Under the pieces are notes generated by a model, which saw only the letters and a program-made list of their open reading frames with translations, did no database searches and was not told where the DNA came from. A stretch of 64,000 nt of DNA. Origin: Octopus sinensis. Taxonomy: Eukaryota. The stretch lies in NCBI RefSeq assembly GCF_006345805.1, contig NC_043016.1, positions 16,368,001 to 16,432,000 on the forward strand. The letters are read 5' to 3'. Positions 4,727 to 61,790 of the stretch are shown here, in pieces (the first letter of the stretch is position 1; every line of letters begins with the position of its first letter). The position numbers were made by a program, and so were the translations under genes.

Positions 4727-4826
4727 NNNNNNNNNNNNNNNNNNNNNNNNNNNNNNNNNNNNNNNNNNNNNNNNNNNNNNNNNNNNNNNNNNNNNNNNNN
4801 NNNNNNNNNNNNNNNNNNNNNNNNNN
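4727..4826. other. Assembly gap (100 N)
   Basis: Run of N adjacent to a (TTA)n tract. Confidence 1.
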
Positions 4827-37955: not shown

Positions 37956-38705
37956 ACTCATGGAGGTATACACACACTCTTCCTCTATCTGTTGTACATT
38001 ATTAAATACCAATATTTTAATTTTCTTTTTAATGAACAAGTTTTGTCTTAGTCTATGCAATCCCTAGCATACACTAGAATAATCCACCTTTCACCATATT
38101 AATCTGAAATTTGTTAGCCTTTCTAAGTTTCAACAAGAATTTATCTTTCTTTACAAGAAACCAAAACTTTACTGTAGCAGTCTTCTATATTCTACCATAT
38201 TATTGATGTTTCAGTAGATGGAATATTAAATTGGTGGACTGGAAATAGAATGCTTTGTAGCTTTTCTCTTCTTTTTTTTTTTTAATGTTCTACTTATGGT
38301 GATAAGTTTAGTCTAAATAAAGATTAACATTAAGACGGTTTATTGTTAGAAATAGTGGAGCAACAAACTGTTTTACTGTGTTTGAATTTCAACCAGTTTA
38401 TATATTCTGTGCTCAAATCTTGCCAGGAGGCAATCTTGCTCTACCTTCCTTAAAAACCCAAAAAAGGTTATACCCATAATATACTGAAAGAGCAAGTTAC
38501 TTACATCTCTTTCATAAAACATTTGTTTTGTGACTGAGGGAACTATGATTATACATCTTGAAAAATACAAATTTGACCAATATTATTGGTACAGGAATTA
38601 AATTAACATCAAATAATTTAATTAGCTTAACCTTTTTCTTTTGTTTTAAATCAATTGTTCTGTTACTTCATAATTCCTATACACTGACAGATAATTATAT
38701 ATATA

Positions 38706-38896
38706 TCATCATCATCGTTTAACGTCCGCTTTCCATGCTAGCATGGGTTGGACGGTTCAACTGGGGTCTGGCAAGCCCGAAGACTGCACCAGGCCAGTCA
38801 GATCTGGCAGTGTTTCTACAGCTGGATGCCCTTCCTAACGCCAACCACTCTGAGAGTGTAGTGGGTGATTTTATGTGCCACCGACACAGGTGCCAT
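38706..38896 (-). mobile_element. RTE-type 3' tail repeat, low divergence
   Basis: Reverse complement ends ...GCATGGAAAGCGGACGTTAAACGATGATGATGA; same family as 4940 and 25486. Confidence 0.75.
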
Positions 38897-48987: not shown

Positions 48988-50929
48988 CAGTAGTTTTATT
49001 TTTATAGCGTGCTTTCACTTCACTACCGAGCGCAGCTCTGTGTGCCTTGGGTATGTGCTGTGATTTGTTGTGATGCTCTGATGGTTATTGTATGGAAAGT
49101 GTTCTGCGTAGGATGTGTGCAGTGCCTAGTAATGCAATTTTCTGTATGTTATATGTGTTTGTAAGTCCTGGTGTTTTTGTTATGTATTTGTCTGAATATT
49201 TTTTTATCATGCCTAATGCACCTACTATGATAGGAATTGTTTCTGTTTTCAGATTCCACATTCTAGTTACCTCTATTTCCAGGTCTTTGTATTTTGAGAG
49301 TTTCTCCATTTCTTTTAGAGACACGTTGTCATCTGCCGGTATTGATACATCAATTAGAAAGCATTTTTTTCTTCATGATCTCTGACAACTATATCTGGTC
49401 TGTTGGCCTTAATTTCTCTATCTGTGTGTATCGGCATATCCCAGAGTATGGTTGCTTTCTCGTTTTCTGTGACCTTTTCTGGTGTGTGCCTATATACATC
49501 TTTTTTCTGTTGTTATTCCATAATGTTGGCATAGCTTCCAATGTATGTAGGTTCCAACTCTGTCATGTCTGTGAATATATTCCTTCTTAGCCAGGACTGG
49601 GCAGCTAGAGATAATATGATTATTGTTTCTTGTCCATCTCCACATATTCTGCAGTTACTTGTAATATTTCTTTTCATTACATGTTTTTGGTAATTTCTGG
49701 TGGGGAGGCTTTGGTCTTGTGTGCTGCAATTAAAAATCCCTCTGTTTCTGCTTTGAGTCCTGAGCTTCTCAACCATTGCTGGGATTTTTCTTTGTCTATT
49801 TCTTTTGCGTTTAGTTTAGTGCAGTATTTACCATGACGGGGCTTTTCTTGTCATCGTTTTATCATGGTCCGTTGCTGTTCTATTTTTAGTTTGGATTTCA
49901 TTTGTTTTATAGCTTTTGTTGTTTCTTCATCATCTTCTTCTTCTTCTTCATGTTTATTAGGTGGTATGAATTCTTGTTTGTATTTGTCAGCTTCCTTAAA
50001 TACTGAGAACTGTTTTTTGTTTTGCTCGTGTTTTGCTGCTATCTGGATCAGTTTTCCTTCCTTCTGAAGTAGGTATTTTTGCAGTCCTATGGTGGTTATT
50101 TTATAGTAGTTTTCCAGCTGTATAAGGCCTCTACCACCTTCTATACGTTGTATATATAGTCTTTCTATGTCAGATTTTGGGTGATGCATCCTAGATCCTG
50201 TCAGTATTTTTCTTGTTTTCCTATCTATTTTGGACAGTTCATTTCGTGTCCAGTTAAGGATATTGTAGCTGTAACTTATAACTGGGACAGCTAAAGTGTT
50301 GATACCTATTATCTTGTTTTTAGCATTGAGCTCTGTTTTTAGTATTGATCTAACTCGTCTATAATATTCTTGCTTTATTTTCTCTTTCATTTGTGTGTGT
50401 TGTGTCTTATCTAGTTCATGGATTCCTAAGTATTTGTAAGTTGGGCTTTGGTCTAATTCTTTTATTTCATTGGTTTTATCTAGTGTGATGTTGTTACTCT
50501 TAACTAGTTTTCCTCTTTTCATGTTACTTTGGCGCATTTTTCTAATCCAAATTTCATATCTATTTCTTTGGTAAATCCATGAACTGTCTTTAATAGTGTT
50601 TCCAGCTGTTTGTCATTTGCAGCGTATAATTTTAGGTCATCCATATATAAAAGGTGGCTGATCGTTTTGCCGTAACATTTATATCCGCATCCAGTTCTAT
50701 TTAGCATATCAGATAGAGGTGACAGTGCCAAGCAGAAAAGGAGTGGAGAGAGCGTGTCTCCCTGGAATATTCCTCTTCTAATGGGGATGTCTTTGGTTTT
50801 CATGAGTCCCTCTTTGTTTGGAGGTGTAGGACTGTTTGCCATTTATTCATAGAGTGCTCTATGAATTTTATGATTGTTGGTGCTACTTTGTTAATGGCTA
50901 GTGTTTCGAGGATCCATGTTGGGGGATGC

Positions 50930-50932
<3 letters not shown>
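48988..50932 (-). mobile_element. R4/Dong-like family C, 5'-truncated frameshifted copy (C')
   Basis: Near-identical to 53732-55670 but with small indels; ORF pieces 50519-50842 (GIFQGDTLSPLLFC, LYMDDLKLYA), 49851-50537, 49085-49324; bounded by (TTA)n. Confidence 0.9.
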
Positions 50933-51002
<70 letters not shown>

Positions 51003-51003
<1 letters not shown>

Positions 51004-53541
51004 TATGTTTGACTTTTGCTTTACATTTACACAAGTTGGCTCCAAGTCTCACCCAGAGACCTCAAGAAACAACAAGTTGGAAGTTTATGTTGGTGTTATG
51101 CCTAGGGTGCCATATATTTGGTTTTGTACTTAGTGTTGTACTAGTGAATGTCTAAAAAAAAAACATACGAAAATTATGTTTGTTTTAAAACTTGAGATTA
51201 TATAGAAAGTATTTTGTGTAGGATATGAGCAGTTCCCATGAGCACTATCTTTTGAATTTCTGCCATTTTGGGGTTTCCTGGTATCTGAGTTAGGTAGCAA
51301 TCAGCCCCTTTTGCTATCATTCCCAGGGCACCTATGACAACAGGTATTATTTTTGTCTTCAGGTTCCACATTTTGCTGATTTCTATTTCCAGATCTTTAT
51401 ATTTGCCCAGTTTTTGGTAGGTCTTGACAGATACGTTTATATTGATTGAGACTGTCATATCAATGAGGAGGCATGTTCTTTGTCTGAAGTCTTTTACTAT
51501 GATGTCTGGCCTATTCGCGTCTATCTTTCTGTCAGTTTGAATGGTGTAGTTCCAGAGGAGTGAGATGAGATCATTTTCAAGCACTGGAGGTGGTTTGTGT
51601 TCCCACCAGTTTTTATCATGGGGCAAATCCAGGTTTTTGCAAATTACCCAGTGAATATATTGTGCTGCTCTATCATGCCTGTTGAGGTACTCTGTAGGCG
51701 CTAGAAGACTGCACTTGGAGACAACATGATCAATGGTTTCATTTTGTTGTCGGCATACACGACATGTTGGGCTACTGCCGTTCTTTAATATGTTGGCTTG
51801 GTAGTTCCTTGTCGGTAGGCATTGATCTTGAGCTGCTATAATAAACCCTTCTGTTTCAGATTTTAAGCCAGAGGCCATTAGCCATTGATGGGTCAGGGCT
51901 TTGTCAACATCTGCATTATTTGCTCTCTTTGGGTATTTGCCATTGAGAGGTTTTTCTTGCCATTTATCATTCAGAATATCTAAGGCAGCAGTTTTAGCAC
52001 GGGTTTTCATGTGCTAAGCTTTTTCTGTGCTTGTTTCTTGTATGTCTAATTCCGAAATTTGTTGTATTCGGAATTCACTTAGATATTCCTTTGCCTGTTT
52101 TGTTACTGAGTATGATGCTTTCTTGTTTTGAGACAAGTTTTAAGATCCAGTCCTCAGAGTTTTTCAGGTAGCTGTCTAGGCCAATTGTTGCTATATTCAT
52201 TGTTATTGCCAGTTGTAAAAGTCCACGGCCCCCCTCTTTTCTTGGCAGATAATGTCATTCTGTATCTGCCTTAGGGTGGTGCATTCTATGCATTGTCAAC
52301 AGTTTTCGTATTTTTCTGTCAAGATTACATATTTCACTAATTGACCAGTCAAGATTACATATTTCACTAATTGACCAGTTAATGATATTGAAACTATAAG
52401 TCACGACTGGTATGGCTAAAGTATTGATCGCTTTGATCCTGTTTCTCGCATTCAGCTCTGTCTTGAGTATTGCTCTTACTCTGCGATAACACTCTCTCCT
52501 GATCCTTTCCCTCATCACTGAATGTTTGATTCCATCCCCTTCAAATACCCCTAGGTACTTGTAGCTCTCCGCTGGTTCTAACTCTTTTATGACATTCTGC
52601 TGGTTGAGGTAAACGTTAGATGTTTCTATCATTTTTCCTTTGATAAAGGTAGCTTTTGCACATTTATCGAGGCCAAATTGCCTCCTGATGTCATCACTGA
52701 ATTGCTTAACAATCGCTAGTAAGCCCTGTAGTTGTTGGTCATTTTTCGCAAAGAGCTTTAAATCATCCATGTAAATGAGATGATTTATATTTTTATCAAA
52801 CATTTTATTTCCAAACTGTGCGTCATTGAGCAATTTTGAGAGAGGTATTAAGGCTAAACAAAAGAGGAGTGGTGATAGTGAGTCGCCCTGGAAAATGCCA
52901 TATGAAATTTTTACATCACCAGCATTTAGAGATTCATTGTCACTGTTCAAAGTTAGTGTGGTTCTCCATGATCTCATACTTATAGACAAAAAGTTTCGCA
53001 GAGTAGGTGCTATTTTATATATATCCAGACATTTCTTAATCCTGTTGTGTGGTTGACTATCAAAAGCCTTTTTATAGTATATCCAGGCTATTGATAAGTT
53101 TTTGTGTCGTTTGTGACAATCTTCTAAGATCCTCTTATTGATGAGTAGTTGACCTTTACAACCATATGATCCACGTTTACATCCTTTCTGTTCATTAGGG
53201 AATATGCTGCTGTCTGTTAAAAAACTATAGGTATATTCCGTCAGGACAAATGTTAGCGTTTTATACATAGTTGTTAAACAGGTTATGGGTTTATAGTTTT
53301 TTCGTTCATTTGTTTCTTCACTATTTGGAAGCAGGAATGTTAACCCATTAACTAGCCAAGGAGGCATCCTACTAGGGTGTTGCAAAACATCATTGTACAG
53401 TTCTGTTAGCAGTTCATGGCTCTCTGGAAAGGCATTCAACCAGAAATTAGGAATTTTATCCTTTCCTGGAGACTTCCATTTGCTTGAACTCCTGAGAGCA
53501 GATCTTACATCTTCTACCTTGATACCCTCCCACTTTTGCTC

Positions 53542-53544
<3 letters not shown>
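51003..53544 (-). mobile_element. R4/Dong-like family B, 5'-truncated, disrupted RT + RLE
   Basis: ORFs 52255-53544 (KSPGKDKIPNFW, GIFQGDSLSPLLFC, IYMDDLKLFA) and 51198-52010 (CRVC...H...C, RHDRAAQYIHW, ANRPDI...LIDM). Internal ~30-bp tandem duplication (WSISEICNLD x2). Confidence 0.92.
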
Positions 53545-53580
<36 letters not shown>

Positions 53581-53603
53581 TACTATTACTATTATTATTG
53601 TTA

Positions 53604-53647
<44 letters not shown>

Positions 53648-53667
53648 GTTGTTGTTGTTGTTATTAC

Positions 53668-53706
<39 letters not shown>

Positions 53707-53731
53707 CATCATCATTATTATTATTATTATT

Positions 53732-56084
53732 CAGTAGTTTTATTTTTATAGCGTGCTTTCACTTCACTACCGAGCGCAGCTCTGTGTGCCTTGGGTATGT
53801 GCTGTGATTTGTTGTGATGCTCTGATGGTTATTGTATGGAAAGTGTTCTGCGTAGGATGTGTGCAGTGCCTAGTAGTGCAATTTTCTGTATGTTATATGT
53901 GTTTGTAAGTCCTGGTGTTTTTGTTATGTATTTGTCTGAATATTTTTTTATCATGCCTAATGCACCTACTATGATAGGAATTGTTTCTGTTTTCAGATTC
54001 CACATTCTAGTGACCTCTATTTCCAGGTCTTTGTATTTTGAGAGTTTCTCCATTTCTTTTAGAGACACGTTGTCATCTGCCGGTATTGATACATCAATTA
54101 GAAAGCATTTTTTTTCTTCATGATCTCTGACAACTATATCTGGTCTGTTGGCCTTAATTTCTCTATCTGTGTGTATCGGCATATCCCAGAGTATGGTTGC
54201 TTTCTCGTTTTCTGTGACCTTTTCTGGTGTGTGCCTATACCATCTTTTTTCTGTTGTTATTCCATAATGTTGGCATAGCTTCCAATGTATGTAGGTTCCA
54301 ACTCTGTCATGTCTGTGAATATATTCCTTCTTAGCCAGGACTGGGCAGCTAGAGATAATATGATTTATTGTTTCTTGTCCATCTCCACATATTCTGCAGT
54401 TACTTGTAATATTTCTTTTCATTACATGTTGGTAATTTCTGGTGGGGAGGCTTTGGTCTTGTGCTGCAATTAAAAATCCCTCTGTTTCTGCTTTGAGTCC
54501 TGAGCTTCTCAACCATTGCTGGGATTTTTCTTTGTCTATTTCTTTTGCGTTTAGTTTAGTCCAGTATTTACCATGAAGGGGTTTTTCTTGCCATCGTTTT
54601 ATCATGGCTTGTTGCTGTTCTATTTTTAGTTTGGATTTCATTTGTTTTATAGCTTTTGTTGTTTCTTCATCATCTTCTTCTTCTTCTTTGTGTTTATTAG
54701 GTGGCATGATTTCTTGTTTGTATTTGTCAGCTTCCTTAAATACTGAGAACAGTTTTTTGTTTTGCTCGTGTTTTGCTGCTATCTGGATCAGTTTTCCTTC
54801 CTTCTGAAGTAGGTATTTTTGCAGTCCTATGGTGGTTATTTTATAGTAGTTTTCCAGCTGTATAAGGCCTCTACCACCTTCTATACGTTGTATATATAGT
54901 CTTTCTATGTCAGATTTTGGGTGATGCATCCTAGATCCTGTCAGTATTTTTCTTGTTTTCCTATCTATTTTGGACAGTTCATTTCGTGTCCAGTTAAGGA
55001 TATTGTAGCTGTAACTTATAACTGGGACAGCTAAAGTGTTGATACCTATTATCTTGTTTTTAGCATTGAGCTCTGTTTTTAGTATTGATCTAACTCGTCT
55101 ATAATATTCTTGCTTTATTTTCTCTTTCATTTGTGTGTGTTGTGTCTTATCTAGTTCATGGATTCCTAAGTATTTGTAAGTTTGGCTTTGGTCTAATTCT
55201 TTTATTTCATTGGTTTTATCTAGTGTGATGTTGTTACTCTTAACTAGTTTTCCTCTTTTCATGGTTACTTTGGCGCATTTTTCTAATCCAAATTTCATAT
55301 CTATTTCTTTGGTAAATCCATGAACTGTCTTTAATAGTGTTTCCAGCTGTTTGTCATTTGCAGCATATAGTTTTAGGTCATCCATATATAAAAGGTGGCT
55401 GATCGTTTTGCCGTAACATTTATATCCGCATCCAGTTCTATTTAGCATATCAGATAGAGGTGACAGTGCCAAGCAGAAAAGGAGTGGAGAGAGCGTGTCT
55501 CCCTGGAATATTCCTCTTCTAATGGGGATGTCTTTGGTTTTCATGAGTCCCTCTTTTGTTTGGAGGTGTAGGACTGTTTGCCATTTATTCATAGAGTGCT
55601 CTATGAATTTTATGATTGTTGGTGCTACTTTGTTAATGGCTAGTGTTTCGAGGATCCATGTGTGGGGGATGCTATCAAACGCCTTTTTGTAGTCAATCCA
55701 GGCCATACTGAGGCCTTTCTTCTTTCTGTGGCTGTCTTCAGTTACGGCTTTATTAATCATTAGTTGATCTTTACAGCCATATGAGCCCTTGCAGCATCCT
55801 TTCTGCTCTTCTGGGAACAGTTTGTTTTCGTCCAGGTGCTTGTTCAGCCTTTGCGATATCACTGCAGTAAATGCCTTGAACATAGTAGGGAGGCAGGTTA
55901 TTGGCCTGTAGTTTTCTGGTTTTGTTGTTTCATTTGATTTGGGAATTAAGATGGTTTTCCCCTTCGTGAGCCATTCAGGCATTGTCTCTGGCTCTGCTAG
56001 TATGCTGTTAAAGTTTTCAGCCATCTTTTTGTGCATTCCTGTTAGATATTTCAACCAGAAGTTGGGGATCTTGTCATGCCATGT
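53732..56084 (-). mobile_element. R4/Dong-like family C, 5'-truncated but uninterrupted RT-zinc knuckle-RLE ORF (~750 aa)
   Basis: ORF 53829-56162 (first 26 codons are TAA repeat): NYRPITCL, AWIDYKKAFDS, GIFQGDTLSP, LYMDDLK, CRIC...H...C, RHD, ANRPDIVVRD...LIDVSIP...EKLSKYKDL. Flanked by (TTA)n. Confidence 0.95.
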
Positions 56085-56097
56085 TATTATTATTATA

Positions 56098-56159
<62 letters not shown>

Positions 56160-56260
56160 CATTATTTTATTATTATTATTATTATCATTATTATTATATT
56201 ATTATTATTATTATAATTATTATTATTATTATTATCATCATCATTATTATTATTATTATA

Positions 56261-56695: not shown

Positions 56696-56747
<52 letters not shown>

Positions 56748-56756
56748 ATTATATAT

Positions 56757-56802
<46 letters not shown>

Positions 56803-56808
56803 TATATC

Positions 56809-56904
<96 letters not shown>

Positions 56905-56959
56905 ATATATATATATATATAGGAATAAAAAATGGAGTCAACGCAGGTTTAAACAAGTA

Positions 56960-57056
56960 TTTTTTCTTTCTACATATGTTTCAAAAATTCCACTGATACT
57001 TATTCAAAAGAATAAAAGGTATAAACAATGCAATCTTCTCTTCGGGAAAGTGAAAA
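56960..57056 (-). ncRNA. Hammerhead-like ribozyme in the 3' terminal region of the PLE (sense strand), CCGAAGA variant
   Basis: Minus strand: TTTTTTCACTTTC-CCGAAGA-long stem II (GAAGATT/AATTTTT, CATTG/CAGTG)-GAAAC-ATAT-GTA-GAAAGAAAAAA. Stem I CTTTC/GAAAG; palindromic stem III ACATATGT. The core has C in place of the conserved U of CUGA. Confidence 0.6.
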
Positions 57057-57250
57057 AACGAAACTTGTCAATACGACATTTTAGCAAAAATGATGGATTC
57101 GTATAGCGATAGACAGAACGCTATTAATATTGTTTAAAAAAACGTTATATGATATAACGTCATAAGTAGCTAACAGAAAGAGTAGGGATATTAATAGTGA
57201 ATGTTAAATATAAAGGAAATTAAAGTCTAAACTATATATAATGATAGAGA

Positions 57251-59773
57251 CTACTTATATGCACTAAAAGTATGCTTTTGCCAATGCTTACATCTGTATG
57301 CTCGTTCTATAACCGTGTTTACTAGAGTATTTTTAGAAAAAATAATGAAAAATAGCTCAGAATTGCAGAGAAGACAGAATTTCTTGCCTTTGTCATATGG
57401 TATCGAAATTGAGAGGATCAACCATTCCAAATGAAATTGTTCATTGTGGTCTTTTAAATTCCAAATCAGTTTGCTGAGACCGGTACTATTCCGTTTATTT
57501 CTATCTCTAAATGTTGAGTAATGGATAGAAATTCTCTTAGATAACTCTAACGATGTGCTTCCAATGTAAAATCGTACTTTATTACGAGTACTGATTATAC
57601 ACTGGTATATAGAATTTTTAATCTTAGAGTTACTTGACATAAATTTAATTCTATTGGGATTGACTTCAGATACAATAACCTTGTTATTAATATTTCTAGA
57701 GGGTTGGATGGTAGTAGCTAAATTAATGTTAGTATTAGTAAATGTATTAATATTTAACAGTTTGTTATTATGAGAAGATATAATTTGCAAGAGATTTTTT
57801 GTGTTTGAAAAACCTATCCTAACCTTATGTGAATTAATTATAGAGTAATATCTAGAATTATTTGGAAAATTCCTAGCAATAGCTTGACGAAACAGCAGTG
57901 GGAGATTAGATTTAATTTGTCTCCCGTAAGGAATTATTAACCAAATATTTTTACTAGTATTCATAGCGTAATTACTTTTGAAGGTGTTATATTTACTTTT
58001 AGATCGGTAATAGGGGAATAAATAAGGGTTATCTGCCTTCATTCGCTTTGTATCGGTGCGTAAGTTATGTTTGTTATCAATAATTCTTTTACGACTAGAA
58101 ATCTTATCTACATTATTGAATTTACAATTAGACTGAGCAGAATCAATGTAGAAAATTTTTTCTGTATAACCTGCTTTGATTAAGGCAGAGTTATAGAATT
58201 CAGCGTTATTATTGAAAATATCAACATTAGCAGATAATTTAGATAATCTAAATGAAATATTCTTAACTAAATTCTTAGTAATTGCTCCAGGATGATTACT
58301 AAATTTGCTAATGTACTTAAGATTGGTCAACGGTTTATGATATGGGAAGTAAGAGTCACTGTGTAAATTAAGGGTAATATCTAAAAAGTTGGCCTTCGTC
58401 AGATCGTCATCAAAAACGATTTTTAAGCCCATTCTACTGAAAAAATTAACTAAACTGTTCTTAACTTTTTGTACCTTTTGGTTAGAAACATTTTGGAGGT
58501 AAAGTAAACAATCATCACGATATAGACCTCCATAAATGTTAGGGAACTCTTCAGCCATTTCAAAAAGAATGTATATACAGACCAAATCAGCTATCTGTGC
58601 TGAATCAGAACTTCCCATAGGTATATCGAAACTATCTGGTGTGTCTTTACGGACCCACAACTTATCATCAAATTTAATAATAGATCTTCTGGCTGCCAAC
58701 ACAACATTAATTTCTTCTCGGGTGAGACCAGCTTTGTTATGAGCAAGCCAAAGTGCCTTATTAAGTACTATAGGATTAATAGACGAATAAAAATTGGAAA
58801 TATCAAACTGGATAAACTTCGTACTCACCTTACTGTTAATAGACCTAAACCAGTCAACTACGTCAAATGAATTAGTCCATAAGCTAAGTTTTAATGTTTT
58901 GATTAGATTAGGAATATATTTATCTAGTATATTTTTACTAAGGATACCGATGTCAGAGCTAGAAGGGCAGATAAGCCTTAATGATGGGTTAGTAAAAAAA
59001 TTTGGTTTGTGATCCTTCAAAATAAACCTAGGTTGCTTAGGAACAAGTGGTTCTGTCTTCATTTGTAGGTTATATTTCTCCATGACTTTCATAGCCTCGA
59101 TGTTGGCTTTCTTAAGTATTCTTTTATCAGCAATTTTATACTTTTTCTGAATTTCTTTTTCAAGTAATTCCAAATAATAGTCTTTATAAAGTTTGTACAG
59201 ATTACCAGTCTTATCAGATTGAACCAACATAGTATCCATAGAATTGATTTCTTTGGTGATGTTGCGAAGATACCTCAGATGTTTATTTCTTAGTGGTGAC
59301 CGTTGAAATTTTACATTTCTCACAATGGACCAGAGATCATCTTCAAATTGCTTCAACCTTGGGTTAGGCGGCGGACTATTTTTAGATTTAAATAACTTGC
59401 TGAACTCAGATGTTTTATCATTAGTGTGTTGTTGAGTGTCATTTTTGTCAAAGAAAAAGGTAAGCCATCTTATTCGGTTGATGAATGAATTAATCTTATT
59501 GACAAGTTGTTTAAGGAAAACATTCTTAGGTGGAATAGGAATGTCCTTAAGAGATGCGTTAATATATCTGCCAGCGATTAGGCTAATAAGTTGCAGCACA
59601 GCTTCCGAGTTTGAGTTGTTGGCAATCTCCCCTGCAGCCAGACTGCTTGGATCTCGGGTCCACTGATAGCGAACAATTTTCTGGTCATCATGTGAACGGG
59701 ATCCATCCAGCAAAACTATTAATTTTGGGAGTTGAATCACTTTGCTGATGTGCAGGCCTATAGTTTTTGGCAT
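57251..59773 (-). CDS. Chimeric 840-aa ORF: CR1-derived leader + KIAA0319-like PKD fragment + Penelope-like (Naiad-like) reverse transcriptase and GIY-YIG endonuclease
   Basis: SLKDIPIP...FINRIRW N-terminus; QFDISNFYSSI, FDIPMGSSDSAQIADLV, GLYRDDCL, NFLDITLNL...SNHP RT motifs; IYQC...FYIGST GIY-YIG; CLLC...CKH tail. No stop in 2.5 kb. The Naiad assignment rests on recalled motif resemblance. Confidence 0.9.
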   Translation of the reverse strand: MPKTIGLHISKVIQLPKLIVLLDGSRSHDDQKIVRYQWTRDPSSLAAGEIANNSNSEAVLQLISLIAGRYINASLKDIPIPPKNVFLKQLVNKINSFINRIRWLTFFFDKNDTQQHTNDKTSEFSKLFKSKNSPPPNPRLKQFEDDLWSIVRNVKFQRSPLRNKHLRYLRNITKEINSMDTMLVQSDKTGNLYKLYKDYYLELLEKEIQKKYKIADKRILKKANIEAMKVMEKYNLQMKTEPLVPKQPRFILKDHKPNFFTNPSLRLICPSSSDIGILSKNILDKYIPNLIKTLKLSLWTNSFDVVDWFRSINSKVSTKFIQFDISNFYSSINPIVLNKALWLAHNKAGLTREEINVVLAARRSIIKFDDKLWVRKDTPDSFDIPMGSSDSAQIADLVCIYILFEMAEEFPNIYGGLYRDDCLLYLQNVSNQKVQKVKNSLVNFFSRMGLKIVFDDDLTKANFLDITLNLHSDSYFPYHKPLTNLKYISKFSNHPGAITKNLVKNISFRLSKLSANVDIFNNNAEFYNSALIKAGYTEKIFYIDSAQSNCKFNNVDKISSRKRIIDNKHNLRTDTKRMKADNPYLFPYYRSKSKYNTFKSNYAMNTSKNIWLIIPYGRQIKSNLPLLFRQAIARNFPNNSRYYSIINSHKVRIGFSNTKNLLQIISSHNNKLLNINTFTNTNINLATTIQPSRNINNKVIVSEVNPNRIKFMSSNSKIKNSIYQCIISTRNKVRFYIGSTSLELSKRISIHYSTFRDRNKRNSTGLSKLIWNLKDHNEQFHLEWLILSISIPYDKGKKFCLLCNSELFFIIFSKNTLVNTVIERAYRCKHWQKHTFSAYK
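59564..59738 (-). pseudogene. Captured host fragment encoding a KIAA0319/KIAA0319L-like PKD domain segment
   Basis: IQLPKLIVLLDGSRSHDDQKIVRYQWTRDPSSLAAGEIANNSNSEAVLQLISLIAGRY matches the recalled KIAA0319-family last PKD repeat pattern LP....LDGS.S.DD..IV.Y.W.RD..S.AAG.V...S.....L.L.NL..G.Y. Confidence 0.8.
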
Positions 59774-59813
59774 CTGCTCTACTTCCCCCTTTATGGATTG
59801 GGTATATATATAT

Positions 59814-59943
59814 ATTTATTATATAGAAGGAGCTTCTACAGGACTAGAACTGTTTCATTCAAAAGAAATCATCAGAGCTTCCTGATGATTTCTTTTGAAT
59901 GAAACAGTTCTAGTCCTGTAGAAGCTCCTTCTATATAATAAAT
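59814..59943. repeat. Perfect 62-bp inverted repeat, 6-nt spacer
   Basis: 59814-59875 is the exact reverse complement of 59882-59943; spacer AGCTTC. Confidence 0.97.
59875..59927 (+). ncRNA. Type I hammerhead ribozyme
   Basis: Stem I GAGCTTC(59875-59881)/GAAGCTC(59921-59927); CTGATGA 59882-59888; short stem II TTC-TTTT-GAA; GAAA 59901-59904; stem III CAG/CTG; GUA triplet 59918-59920. Confidence 0.85.
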
Positions 59944-60001
59944 TAATTTACTCTGCTATGTACCTTATTTACTGTGGTTAACCCCGACTCAACCCGGGAC
60001 C

Positions 60002-60063
<62 letters not shown>

Positions 60064-60289
60064 TTGGCATGCTCACTTAGCCAGCAGGGTGGCGTCATTT
60101 GAAGGCTAAAACAATGTGAAGCGCATTGTGACCAGTGATGTGTAGTAACATCTGATAGCCTGGTCGGTCACAGTGATCACGGTGGTATAAATATATATAT
60201 ATATACATTTTATTTTTTCTCTAGTTTCAGCTCAGAGCTGTGACCATGCTGATGCGCTGCCGTTTTGTGCTACACTGTTATTCCTAAGA

Positions 60290-61790
60290 GCCTCCTCTAA
60301 TATGTGGCACTTGGTGAAGAATGGAGTCTGATATAGTTACCATCATTTGCATCCTCTTGCCATGAGGTAGGTTCATTTGGGACTCTCGACAGGAAGATGT
60401 CCAGCTTTGATTTAAAAACCCCTACATCTACTTTGTGCAAATTCCTCAGACTCTTTGGGAGAATATTAAAAAGCTGTGGGTCCTTGAAACCCAGGCTGTT
60501 ACAGTAGCTGGTTCTGAAGCATGATGGCATTGCTTGGATCTTTGGCACTATGTAGTGTCGTCCCGTTCTAGCATCGGTGTAGCTTTCAATGCCAAAATTT
60601 GGCACAATTCCTTCTAGGATCTTCCAGATATATATTACTGCATACCTCCCCCACCTTCTCTCCAGGGAGTAGAGTCTTAGCTGTTTCAGCCTTACCCAGT
60701 AGCTGAGCTGTTGCAAAGAGACGATCTTCTTTGTGAATCTTCTCTGGATTACTTCAAGGTCCGCTGTTAATTTTACACTGGTGGGTGACCATAGCTGTGA
60801 GCAGTAATCCAGGCGACTGAGGACGAATGTCCACCAGAGGACCATCATGGTTTCCTTATCTCTGGTTCTGAATGTTCTTAGGATCCATCCAGCCAGTCGT
60901 CTGCACTTTGTCGCCATCCTGGTAATGTGCACTTGGAAAGAGGTATCATCACTCATGTCGATATCCAAGTCCCTCACTGACTTAGGCTCTGGGATTGAAA
61001 TTCCCTGTGGACCGGTGTATCCTGTAAGTTTAATATTCAGTTTTGGGTGCTGGTAGCGCAGGGCCTGGAATTTTTCAGCATTAAACTGCATATTATTATC
61101 CTCAGCCCATCTGTAGATTGAGTCCAACTCCTGATGCAGATGTACAACATCGCTGGGGTTCTGTATTTTCTGTGAGACTTTCGTATCATCTGCATAGCTT
61201 GCCAGAATGGCTATCCGGGCATTTGAGGGCATATCTGAGAGAGCCACTATAAAAAGCAGTGGTCCCAAGACAGTGCCCTGTGGAACACTGCTCACTATTT
61301 GTGTGTTCATAGAGGTAGCTCCATTAACCACTACTGCCTGACTCCTATCTTTCAGGAAGTCATATAACCACTCTCCAAGTTTTCCAGCTATGCCGAGGTC
61401 ACGCAATTTGTGGCATATCATACCATGATCCACCTTGTCAAAAGCTTTTGCAAAATCAAGGTAGATTACGTCCACATTTGATTTGTTGAGTAACTACCTC
61501 ACACCCAGTAATAATGTTGTAAGATCTGGGTTAGGCAGCTCCTACCTGGTTGAAAACCATGTTGGGTATCACTCAGCAAGTTATTTTCGTCAAGGAATAC
61601 GATTAGTTTCCCTCTGACTATCCGTTCCATGACTTTGCTGATGTGCAGGCCTATAGTTTTTGGCATCTGCTCTACTTCCCCCTTTATGGATTGGGTATAT
61701 TATTCCCTCCTACAGTTTGCTTGGCAGTTTGCCATTTGTAAGAAAGCTCTGGAAGAGAATTTGAAGGGGTTTTGCCAGGGCATGTTTACA
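60290..61790 (-). mobile_element. CR1-clade LINE, 5'-truncated and frameshifted RT
   Basis: LAKPLQILFQSFL, PIHKGGSRADAKNYRP, HISKVMERIV, QHGF..GRSCLTQ, VIYLDFAKAFDKVDH, VPQGTVLGPLLF, SYADDTK, SRLDYCSQLWSP, LYSLERR. Confidence 0.92.

What the first reader, a model, noticed from the sequence alone, without database searches (positions are those of the whole stretch)
59564..59738. Host KIAA0319/KIAA0319L-like PKD-domain sequence fused in frame to the N-terminus of a Penelope RT-endonuclease
Seen: 58 codons (IQLP...LDGSRSHDDQKIVRYQWTRDPSSLAAGE...LIAGRY) join without a frameshift to INASLKDIPIP, where the PLE protein begins. The fragment has no splice sites or neighbouring PKD exons of its own. 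Known: this pattern is that of the last PKD repeat of the KIAA0319 family (neuronal/AAV-receptor proteins), recalled from memory. Inference: the PLE RT jumped templates onto a host mRNA, creating a host-domain/retroelement chimeric ORF. If multicopy, this is a PLE lineage carrying a captured host domain. This is the best candidate for a novel system in the window.
Basis: partly seen in the sequence, partly recalled or inferred. Interest (0 to 1): 0.88.

Follow-up and report, generated by a model that had tools for sequence, protein, structure and literature searches.

The report
Octopus retrotransposon fused to host mRNA piece
A young Penelope-like retrotransposon copy in an octopus genome carries, at its cut-off front end, 183 bases copied from the spliced messenger RNA of the host KIAA0319-like gene; this is a real but probably one-off by-product of reverse transcription, not a new system.

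Summary
Window 59562-59744 (minus strand) is 182/183 identical to the Octopus vulgaris KIAA0319 gene. It consists of the last 115 nt of one exon joined directly to the first 68 nt of the next. The 1,832-bp GT-AG intron that separates them in the gene is missing, so the piece was copied from spliced mRNA. It starts and ends inside exons, and no other KIAA0319 exon lies in the window.

Downstream it joins a Penelope-like element (PLE) with Hydra-clade features. The PLE has lost its 5' UTR, its ATG and about 5 codons. Upstream, a 6-nt microhomology joins the piece to 58-69 nt of a LINE reverse-transcriptase sequence. That sequence is identical to a LINE copy 1.9 kb away and supplies the ATG of the 840-codon ORF. 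The composite lies between TA-repeat runs, the Hydra-clade target.

Best reading: one PLE insertion whose cDNA switched template to host mRNA, and perhaps to LINE RNA or DNA. This is the PLE counterpart of LINE-made chimeric retrocopies.

The PKD piece is only about two thirds of a domain. I found no evidence of a multicopy lineage, but no octopus genome could be searched. Interest is moderate.

The parts
59562..59744 (-). 183-nt copy of spliced KIAA0319(-like) mRNA: the last 115 nt of one exon (59744..59630) plus the first 68 nt of the next (59629..59562). It encodes most of the last PKD repeat (KVIQLP...LIAGRY).
   Evidence: blastn to the O. vulgaris gene locus L002: 116 nt at 100% and 69 nt at 98.6%. 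Script: 182/183 identical to exon A + exon B joined; the piece starts 38 nt into exon A and stops 70 nt before the end of exon B; the single mismatch is at window 59583 (N->S). Pfam PF22352 28.1 bits.
59629..59630 (-). Exon-exon junction (...GCTGCAGGG|GAGATTGCC...). In the parent gene a 1,832-bp GT...AG intron lies here.
   Evidence: L002 shows CAGGG|GTAGGT ... CCACAG|GAGATT. Argonauta hians shows CAGGG|GTATGT ... TTCCAG|AACATA at the same codon position.
59739..59807 (-). LINE reverse-transcriptase fragment (R2), 69 nt. It is 100% identical to 61632..61700 of a LINE copy 1,893 bp upstream on the same strand. It supplies the ATG (59773..59771) and codons 1-12 in the LINE's own frame. Its ends overlap the neighbours by ATATA (TA run) and CAAAGT (host mRNA).
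   Evidence: the repeat finder family D4; base-by-base comparison; blastn 72 nt at 98.6%. The same peptide MPKTIGLHISKV starts the LINE ORF 61499..61666.
59739..59744 (-). 6-nt microhomology CAAAGT shared by the LINE sequence (..ATCAGCAAAGT|CATGG) and the KIAA0319 exon (..GGGGACAAAGT|GATTC) at their junction.
   Evidence: Direct three-way comparison of window R2, window R1 and L002.
56922..59561 (-). 5'-truncated Penelope-like element of Hydra-clade type, 2.64 kb. It lacks the 5' UTR, the ATG and about 5 codons. The RT (YRDD), DKT motif and C-terminal GIY-YIG nuclease are intact. The 3' UTR is about 330 nt and ends at a (TA)n run.
   Evidence: 72 homologues at 27-39% identity, about 700-760 aa, align from their residues 1-12 to ORF residues 70-75 and start M-x7-SLKDIPIP. 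Invariant motifs are kept. AF2 model pLDDT >90 over the PLE part, with Foldseek top hits telomerase RT at 3e-9. Clade features match PMC8557442 section 11.
57251..59773 (-). Chimeric 840-codon ORF: LINE codons 1-12, host PKD codons 12-71, PLE codons 71-840.
   Evidence: the ORF listing. P(no stop in 769 codons at this composition) is about 1.6e-26; the other frames have 46 and 144 stops.
56700..56921 (.). (TA)n microsatellite abutting the PLE 3' end: the target-site side where reverse transcription would have been primed.
   Evidence: Sequence; repeat families D1-D3. Hydra-clade PLEs insert into (TA)n.
59803..59818 (.). Short TA run abutting the 5' end of the composite. It overlaps the outer end of a 144-bp palindrome (59807-59950).
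   Evidence: Sequence; inverted repeat I5.
60200..61785 (-). Neighbouring 5'-truncated LINE copy that contains R1 (61632..61700) in its native context. It is the possible template for, or a sister of, the LINE fragment in the chimera.
   Evidence: Pfam RVT_1 E=7e-17 on ORF 60297..61475. The LINE reading frame continues on both sides of R1.

Best explanation
This is one recent retrotransposition event of a Hydra-clade Penelope-like element into a (TA)n microsatellite of an Octopus vulgaris-lineage genome.

Proposed sequence of events:
1. Reverse transcription was primed at the TA repeat on the element's 3' end and copied the sense PLE RNA almost to the start of its ORF, stopping about 17 nt after the ATG.
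2. The growing cDNA then switched template to a spliced KIAA0319(-like) mRNA. It entered in the middle of one exon and copied 183 nt backwards across the exon-exon junction.
3. It then continued, through a 6-nt microhomology (CAAAGT), on a LINE reverse-transcriptase sequence for about 60 nt.
4. It was finally joined to the TA-rich upstream end of the target through a 5-nt ATATA overlap.

All three pieces are in sense orientation and happen to be in frame. The result is an 840-codon ORF: a LINE-derived ATG, two thirds of a PKD repeat, and a nearly complete RT-endonuclease.

Shown: the composition, the missing intron, the truncation point, the microhomology, the TA flanks and the intact PLE ORF.

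Inferred: that the junctions arose by template switching during a single integration, and that the product is a single-copy accident with no function for the PKD piece.
For: - Host origin and spliced state: 182/183 nt identity to exon A + exon B of the O. vulgaris gene, with the 1,832-bp intron absent. The same intron position occurs in Argonauta.
- The piece begins 38 nt inside exon A and ends 70 nt before the end of exon B. No homology continues on either side, and no other KIAA0319 exon is in the window. The window is not collinear with the gene locus.
- PLE truncation: homologues start M-x7-SLKDIPIP, while the window reads ..GRYI|NASLKDIPIP.
- PLE identity: DKT, R-W-K-like, YRDD and GIY..YIG motifs and invariant residues are kept; telomerase-RT fold hits; these match the Hydra clade description, including the (TA)n target and <3 kb size.
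- TA runs flank both ends.
- A 6-nt microhomology lies at the LINE/host junction and 5 nt at the TA/LINE junction.
- Youth: 0.5% divergence from the parent gene, and an 840-codon open frame in 67% A+T DNA.
- Precedent: LINE reverse transcriptases make bipartite and tripartite chimeras by template jumps (PMC2104539; bioRxiv 10.1101/2025.02.02.635956). Template jumps have been proposed for PLE replication (PMC3846280).
Against: - No target-site duplication can be read, because both flanks are TA repeats. A single integration event is therefore not proven.
- The PLE family consensus is unknown, so microhomology at the host/PLE junction cannot be assessed.
- The LINE piece is identical to a copy only 1.9 kb away. 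That fits a local DNA template or a pre-existing second LINE copy at least as well as a second RNA template jump.
- No reads were available to verify the assembly.
- No hammerhead ribozyme or pseudo-LTR was detected, although Hydra elements are reported to have hammerheads.
- This copy lacks the cysteines of the clade's linker zinc finger.
Confidence: 0.78

Rival explanations
1. Bipartite rather than tripartite chimera. The 69-nt LINE piece was not copied during the event. It is the remnant of a second, pre-existing 5'-truncated LINE copy in the same TA microsatellite. The host-mRNA/PLE cDNA was joined to it by microhomology (CAAAGT), with deletion of the rest of that LINE (at least 1.4 kb of target DNA).
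For: The neighbouring LINE copy is also bounded by TA-rich runs at both ends, so this LINE also lands in TA repeats and two copies in one microsatellite are plausible. This explains why an identical LINE sequence lies only 1.9 kb away. The TA/LINE boundary shows an ATATA overlap, as expected of an ordinary 5'-truncated LINE insertion.
Against: It requires a large target deletion. Same orientation and same reading frame would then be coincidence. The mechanism already needed for the host/PLE junction (template switching) explains this junction too.
Confidence: 0.3
2. A propagating PLE sub-lineage that has captured a host PKD module as a functional N-terminal extension.
For: The fusion is in frame. 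The chimeric ATG is the only start that would give a near full-length RT-endonuclease, because the first internal Met is about residue 180. The PLE ORF is intact.
Against: No second copy of the PLE or the fusion is in the window, L001 or L002. No protein more than 39% identical to the PLE part is in the protein collection, and the exact ORF is not on record. Only profile positions 7-62 of 84 of the PKD domain are present, and the N-terminus is modelled as disordered. The PLE 5' UTR and pseudo-LTR are absent, so the copy has no known promoter. The LINE piece identical to a neighbour points to a local, single event. In-frame joining is expected in about 1/9 of such accidents.
Confidence: 0.05
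3. Two-step origin by 5' transduction. A 5'-truncated PLE first inserted into the ATATAT motif inside the second exon of the KIAA0319 gene. The spliced host-PLE read-through transcript was then retrotransposed and 5'-truncated.
For: The host sequence ends exactly at ...GGCAGATATAT, a miniature TA repeat of the kind this PLE clade targets. An in-frame fusion would be needed for cis-translation of the RT from such a transcript.
Against: The O. vulgaris reference gene has an intact exon with no PLE. O. sinensis, O. bimaculoides and Argonauta proteins read through normally. It needs two rare events, one of them disrupting a conserved gene.
Confidence: 0.06
4. Break repair by capture of separate cDNA fragments. 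A double-strand break in the fragile TA repeat was patched by end-joining of independent PLE, host and LINE cDNA pieces, rather than by template switching of one cDNA.
For: Microhomologies of 5-6 nt at two junctions are also typical of alternative end-joining. No target-site duplication is visible.
Against: All three pieces share one orientation (1/4 by chance). The PLE 3' end sits precisely on its clade's preferred target, as expected of endonuclease-driven, target-primed insertion.
Confidence: 0.07
5. Genuine exon of a host gene that overlaps the transposons, or a DNA-level duplication of part of the gene.
For: High identity to the annotated protein.
Against: The piece lacks the intron that splits it in the real gene and begins and ends within exons. 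The real gene, with all its exons, lies at another locus (L002) that is not collinear with the window. No other exons occur within 59 kb downstream.
Confidence: 0.01
6. Assembly or library artefact, such as a chimeric join or cDNA contamination.
For: The window is a scaffolded assembly with an N gap (4727-4826) in repeat-rich, TA-rich DNA. PLE structures are known to trouble assemblers (PMC8557442).
Against: Neither junction lies in a repeat long enough to mis-join reads; the overlaps are 5-6 nt. The host piece carries a private substitution. The architecture matches what in vivo retrotransposition is known to produce.
Confidence: 0.03

Closest known systems
LINE-made chimeric retrocopies (bipartite and tripartite 'chimeric retrogenes'; U6/L1 and mRNA/L1 chimeras): Gogvadze et al. 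2007 (PMC2104539); Law & Burns 2025 (bioRxiv 10.1101/2025.02.02.635956)
   Same: Copies of different transcripts are fused head to tail in one orientation. The retroelement is the 3' part and the cellular RNA fragment is at the 5' end of a 5'-truncated element. Two jumps can give three parts. The cellular part is intronless.
   Different: The 3' (priming) component here is a Penelope-like element with a GIY-YIG nuclease, not a LINE. There is no poly(A) and no readable target-site duplication. The junction falls inside the element's ORF and keeps the frame. In the paper searches run here I found no report of a PLE-made chimera with a spliced host mRNA.
Penelope-mediated mobilisation of host genes and capture of N-rich coding segments in Adineta vaga: Arkhipova et al. 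2013 (PMC3846280)
   Same: PLE machinery moves or incorporates non-PLE sequence. The authors invoke template jumps and note that a chimeric ORF can persist if it stays open.
   Different: In the rotifer the mobilised genes keep their introns and are framed by pseudo-LTRs, and the captured ORF inserts are low-complexity N-rich stretches inside the ORF. Here the captured piece is a spliced fragment of a defined host mRNA at the 5' end, with no pseudo-LTR.
Hydra clade of C-terminal EN+ Penelope-like elements: Craig et al. 2021 (PMC8557442)
   Same: Under 3 kb; single ORF; DKT instead of DKG; R-W-K region (RWL here, RWK in homologues); no Cys pair between GIY and YIG; insertion into (TA)n; molluscan host.
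   Different: This copy lacks the CxCX5C linker cysteines that its homologues keep. It has a 26-aa insertion. No hammerhead ribozyme was detected.
KIAA0319 / KIAA0319L PKD-domain proteins (Pfam PF22352)
   Same: The 61 residues are 60/61 identical to the last PKD repeat of the Octopus protein.
   Different: It is only a fragment: profile positions 7-62 of 84, with no signal peptide, no other repeats and no transmembrane segment. It is a retro-copied piece, not a family member gene.

Membership tests
KIAA0319-family PKD repeat (Pfam PF22352 K319L-like_PKD) | Profile match at or above Pfam's gathering score | tested here: met
   28.1 bits against a cut-off of 27 for the 58-aa piece alone; 24 bits (below cut-off) when scored within the whole ORF.
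KIAA0319-family PKD repeat (Pfam PF22352 K319L-like_PKD) | Complete domain (all of the ~84 profile positions) | tested here: not met
   Only profile positions 7-62 are present. The parent protein continues IFTLHVFDSDGLSSSDSASIIVKP, which is absent here.
Retro-copy of a host mRNA | Near-identity to the parent gene's exons with the intervening intron precisely missing | tested here: met
   182/183 nt. The 1,832-bp GT-AG intron of L002 is absent at window 59630|59629. The intron position is conserved in Argonauta.
Retro-copy of a host mRNA | 3' end of the mRNA with a poly(A) tail (classical processed pseudogene) | tested here: not met
   The piece is internal (38 nt into one exon to 68 nt into the next). 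No further KIAA0319 sequence is in the window. It is therefore a fragment chimera, not a processed pseudogene.
Penelope-like element (EN+) | Reverse transcriptase of the telomerase-related type with catalytic YxDD | tested here: met
   GLYRDD is invariant in a 41-sequence alignment. AF2 model pLDDT >90 over the RT. Foldseek top PDB hits are telomerase RTs at E 3e-9 to 1e-7. No Pfam, NCBIfam or PDB sequence-profile hit.
Penelope-like element (EN+) | C-terminal GIY-YIG endonuclease | tested here: inconclusive
   The motif pattern IYQCI-x10-FYIGST...R747...H751...E806...N819 is aligned with invariant columns of the homologues. No HMM library or fold hit was obtained specifically for this domain.
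Penelope-like element (EN+) | Pseudo-LTR / tandem or inverted partial copy, and hammerhead ribozyme | tested here: not met
   No internal or flanking repeat of PLE sequence. No Rfam hammerhead at gathering score or at E<=5. This is expected for a solo 5'-truncated copy.
Hydra clade of PLEs (PMC8557442) | DKT instead of DKG; RWK motif; <3 kb; no CCHH inside GIY-YIG | tested here: met
Hydra clade of PLEs (PMC8557442) | Linker CxCX5C zinc-finger motif | tested here: not met
   Homologues have CNCRxKxxCPLxGxC. The window copy has SEVNPNRIKFMSSNSK, with all four Cys replaced.
Hydra clade of PLEs (PMC8557442) | Insertion into (TA)n | tested here: met
   (TA)n at 56700-56921 abuts the 3' end; a TA run at 59803-59818 abuts the 5' end of the composite.
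Hydra clade of PLEs (PMC8557442) | Phylogenetic placement with published Hydra families | not testable with these tools
   Repbase and supplementary sequences are not held.
Template-switch chimeric retrocopy | Parts from different transcripts, same orientation, retroelement at the 3' end, cellular part intronless | tested here: met
   LINE, host mRNA and PLE are all in sense on the minus strand.
Template-switch chimeric retrocopy | Whole composite framed by one target-site duplication (single integration) | tested here: inconclusive
   Both flanks are TA repeats, so a duplication cannot be recognised.
Mobile PLE lineage with captured host domain | Several genomic copies sharing the same host/PLE junction | not testable with these tools
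   No octopus genome can be searched by DNA here. Indirect result: no other copy in 244 kb of octopod DNA held, and none in the protein collections.

The most novel reading that the evidence does not exclude
The LINE-ATG/PKD/PLE fusion is not a dead-on-arrival accident. It would be the founder or a member of an active Octopus PLE sub-family whose RT-endonuclease carries a host-derived, PKD-like N-terminal extension, translated from an ATG donated by a LINE fragment. That would be a retroelement whose lost start codon was rescued by captured host and LINE coding sequence and which has since propagated.
Probability: 0.05. Interest if true: 0.75.

Novelty: new variant of a known kind. Interest (0 to 1): 0.4.

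Why it matters
How Penelope-like elements replicate is still unsettled. Because they carry and spread introns, it has been suggested that they may use unspliced or even antisense templates (PMC3846280).

Here a correctly spliced, sense host mRNA fragment is collinear with the sense strand of a PLE at the point where its cDNA would have been growing. That is a natural-experiment trace consistent with three things: reverse transcription of a sense PLE RNA from the 3' end, target priming at (TA)n, and template switching by a telomerase-related RT in vivo.

It also shows that PLEs, not only LINEs, can scatter pieces of host coding sequence and create in-frame host-transposon ORFs. This matters for counting retrocopies and for gene annotation in PLE-rich invertebrate genomes. 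As a single locus it is an anecdote, and its value lies in prompting a genome-wide search for such junctions.

Tried and rejected
- Genuine-exon reading: rejected by the missing intron and the separate parent locus.
- Classical processed pseudogene later hit by a PLE: rejected. No remaining KIAA0319 sequence lies on the far side of the PLE or anywhere else in the window, and the TA repeat directly abuts the PLE 3' end.
- Search for other fusion copies:
  - The whole-ORF protein search gave only distant PLEs (at most 39% identity) plus true KIAA0319 proteins.
  - A 171-aa junction query returned nothing at all, not even the KIAA0319 proteins. I treat this as a limitation of the tool's word index, not as evidence.
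  - The exact-ORF look-up was negative.
- O. sinensis gene DNA could not be fetched because the gene range is too long. Look-ups of P0073 and P0074 found no record.
- Hammerhead ribozyme and other Rfam families: none at gathering score. Only sub-threshold hairpin-like miRNA matches to the palindrome and the TA repeats. A manual CUGANGA scan found nothing in the 3' UTR.
- Pfam, NCBIfam and PDB sequence-profile searches do not recognise the PLE. Identity was established by alignment motifs, the literature description and fold search instead.
- Supplementary Hydra-clade sequences are not held.
- The palindrome, the inter-repeat segments and the PLE 3' UTR have no other copy in the DNA held.
- I did not scan the viral, prokaryotic or metagenome DNA collections for the junctions. 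They do not contain octopus genomes, so a null result would say nothing.
Full report
**What is in the sequence**

On the minus strand an 840-codon ORF runs from 59773 to 57251. Its first 12 codons (MPKTIGLHISKV) are followed by IQLPKLIVLLDGSRSHDDQKIVRYQWTRDPSSLAAGEIANNSNSEAVLQLISLIAGRY and then INASLKDIPIP..., with no frameshift.

The coordinates given (59564-59738) are one base out of frame; 59564-59737 is the in-frame 58-codon stretch. That stretch alone scores 28.1 bits on Pfam PF22352 'K319L-like PKD' against a gathering cut-off of 27. It covers profile positions 7-62 of 84.

**Where the PKD piece comes from**

A protein search with the whole ORF returned two kinds of hit:
- 72 distant PLE proteins;
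- KIAA0319(-like) proteins of Octopus vulgaris and O. sinensis that are 98% identical over exactly the 61 residues KVIQLP...GRYI.

O. bimaculoides differs at two further positions, so the window belongs to the vulgaris/sinensis lineage.

I fetched the O. vulgaris gene locus (L002, OX597817.1:59,716,851-59,797,065) and the Argonauta hians gene locus (L001). At DNA level:
- window 59744..59630 equals the last 115 nt of one exon, at 100% identity;
- window 59629..59562 equals the first 68 nt of the next exon, with one mismatch at 59583 that causes N->S.

In the gene these two blocks are separated by a 1,832-bp intron with canonical ends (CAGGG|GTAGGT...CCACAG|GAGATT). Argonauta has an intron at the same codon position and phase. 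The window reads straight across (..GCTGCAGGG GAGATTGCC..), so the piece was copied from spliced mRNA.

The piece begins 38 nt inside the first exon and stops 70 nt before the end of the second. Homology to the gene ceases abruptly on both sides. No other KIAA0319 exon is detectable in the 64 kb even at E=50. Apart from dispersed SINE-like repeats, the window shares nothing else with the gene locus.

A DNA-level duplication and a classical processed pseudogene are excluded as well.

**The retroelement**

The 72 homologues are 27-39% identical and about 700-760 aa long. They align from their own residues 1-12 to ORF residues 70-75 and run to the C-terminus. Their N-termini read M-x7-S-L-K-[ND]-I-P-[IL]-P.

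The window has ...A-G-R-Y-I|N-A-S-L-K-D-I-P-I-P, and host-derived bases end within codon 71. The PLE has therefore lost its 5' UTR, its ATG and only about 5 codons, roughly 17 nt of ORF.

The rest of the ORF is intact:
- GLYRDD, DKT and the GIY...YIG pattern are present, and every column that is invariant in a 41-sequence alignment is kept.
- An AlphaFold model built on that alignment has pLDDT >90 through the PLE part. Its best PDB fold matches are telomerase reverse transcriptases at E 3e-9 to 1e-7, as expected for PLEs.
- Sequence-profile libraries do not recognise the protein.

The motif set and context match the Hydra clade of Craig et al. 2021 (PMC8557442):
- DKT instead of DKG;
- an R-W-K region;
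- no Cys pair between GIY and YIG;
- a CxCX5C linker in the homologues;
- size under 3 kb;
- insertion into (TA)n.

The 3' UTR ends at 56922 against a ~220-bp (TA)n tract. No pseudo-LTR or hammerhead ribozyme was found, which fits a solo truncated copy.

**The third part**

The first 12 codons are not PLE or host-gene sequence. Window 59739-59807 (69 nt) is 100% identical to 61632-61700. That segment lies in its native context inside the reverse-transcriptase ORF of a LINE copy 1,893 bp upstream on the same strand.

The LINE sequence (..ATCAGCAAAGT|CATGG) and the host exon (..GGGGACAAAGT|GATTC) share CAAAGT exactly at their junction. At its other end the LINE piece overlaps the TA run by ATATA. 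The LINE piece is in its own reading frame and supplies the ATG.

**Mechanism**

The arrangement is, 5' to 3': TA run, LINE fragment, spliced host mRNA fragment, 5'-truncated PLE, (TA)n. All parts are in sense orientation, and the junctions that can be assessed show short microhomologies. This is what serial template switching of a growing cDNA predicts.

Such switching is documented for LINE reverse transcriptases, which make bipartite and tripartite chimeras (PMC2104539; bioRxiv 10.1101/2025.02.02.635956). Template jumps have been proposed for PLEs (PMC3846280).

The 3' component, and so the primed template, is the PLE, and it sits on its clade's preferred target. I therefore attribute the event to the PLE machinery.

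The event is recent. The host piece differs from its parent at 1 of 183 positions. A 769-codon PLE frame has stayed open in 67% A+T DNA; the chance expectation is about 1.6e-26, and the other frames have 46 and 144 stops.

In-frame joining of three coding pieces is expected about once in nine and is not evidence of selection.

**Open points**

1. The origin of the LINE piece is uncertain. There are three possibilities:
   - a second jump onto LINE RNA;
   - templated synthesis on the neighbouring LINE DNA or its nascent transcript;
   - a pre-existing second LINE copy to which the cDNA was joined, with a target deletion.

   An identical copy lies only 1.9 kb away, and the LINE itself sits between TA-rich runs. 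That keeps the last two possibilities live. I give the pre-existing-copy (bipartite) version about 0.3.
2. No target-site duplication can be read in TA repeats, so a single integration is inferred rather than shown.
3. The host sequence ends at ...AGATATAT, a mini TA repeat. This allows a two-step alternative: PLE insertion into that exon, then 5' transduction. The reference gene is intact, so I rate this low.
4. Reads were not available, so the assembly is unverified. The junction overlaps of 5-6 nt are too short to cause mis-joins.

**Is it a lineage or a system?**

Nothing indicates so:
- No second copy of the PLE, the LINE or the fusion exists in the window, in 80 kb of O. vulgaris or in 100 kb of Argonauta DNA.
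- The protein collections hold no relative above 39% identity and not this ORF.
- The copy lacks the element's 5' UTR.
- The PKD piece lacks the last quarter of the domain and is modelled as disordered.

No octopus genome could be searched by DNA here, so multicopy status remains untested. I put it at about 5%.

**Comparison with what is known**

The closest known phenomenon is the LINE-made chimeric retrocopy. PLE-mediated movement of host sequence is also known, but in a different form: intron-containing genes framed by pseudo-LTRs, and N-rich inserts inside the ORF (PMC3846280). In the paper searches run here I found no report of a PLE joined to a spliced host mRNA fragment.

I therefore classify the finding as a new variant of a known kind, of moderate interest. 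Its main value is as a trace of sense-RNA, 3'-to-5' reverse transcription with template switching by a telomerase-related transposon RT. It also prompts a systematic search for such junctions.

Noticed in passing
window 59807-59950: A 144-bp near-perfect palindrome (69-nt arms, 96% complementary, 6-nt loop) lies immediately upstream of the chimera's 5' end, and its outer ends are TA-rich. It has no other copy in the window, L001 or L002, and only sub-threshold miRNA-hairpin Rfam matches. PLE literature links palindromes at junctions to self-priming (PMC3846280), but this one contains no PLE sequence. Its origin is unexplained.
   Followed up: partly
window 57600-57690 (ORF residues ~695-716) and ~57950-58030 (residues ~585-610): This PLE copy has replaced all four cysteines of the linker zinc-finger motif (CNCRxKxxCPLxGxC in over 90% of homologues) and carries a 26-aa insertion. 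Even so, the ORF is open and the element sits in (TA)n. The published suggestion that this linker directs (TA)n targeting may therefore not hold for this family, or the copy was mobilised in trans.
   Followed up: partly
window 60200-61785 (minus strand): A 5'-truncated LINE copy is bounded by TA-rich runs at both ends, and its ORF is broken between 61499 and 61475. Together with the PLE and the palindrome, it shows that this TA microsatellite has collected several independent insertions.
   Followed up: partly
window 49851-56162 (minus strand): A cluster of two or three related LINE-type RT ORFs (228, 270, 486 and 777 aa) lies in tandem or nested arrangement. Several are preceded by long (ATT/ATA)n runs that translate as poly-Ile.
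   Followed up: no
window 38705-38895; L002 many sites: A SINE-like repeat of about 190 bp has about ten copies (83-99% identity) inside the O. vulgaris KIAA0319 locus. This confirms that the window and L002 come from the same or a very close species.
   Followed up: no
window 4727-4826: A 100-N assembly gap shows the window comes from a scaffolded assembly.
   Followed up: no
L002 23914-46806 (O. vulgaris KIAA0319 locus): Two exons of the gene (protein residues ~331-404 of P0085) occur three times at ~10.4-kb spacing. This matches the triplicated PKD block in the 1,166-aa O. vulgaris models but not the O. sinensis protein. It is either a real tandem triplication or an assembly artefact in O. 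vulgaris.
   Followed up: no
(tool behaviour): A 171-aa junction query to the word-indexed protein search returned no hit at all. Yet the same 61 host residues had retrieved eight KIAA0319 proteins as part of the 840-aa query. Negative results from that tool on short queries should not be trusted.
   Followed up: no
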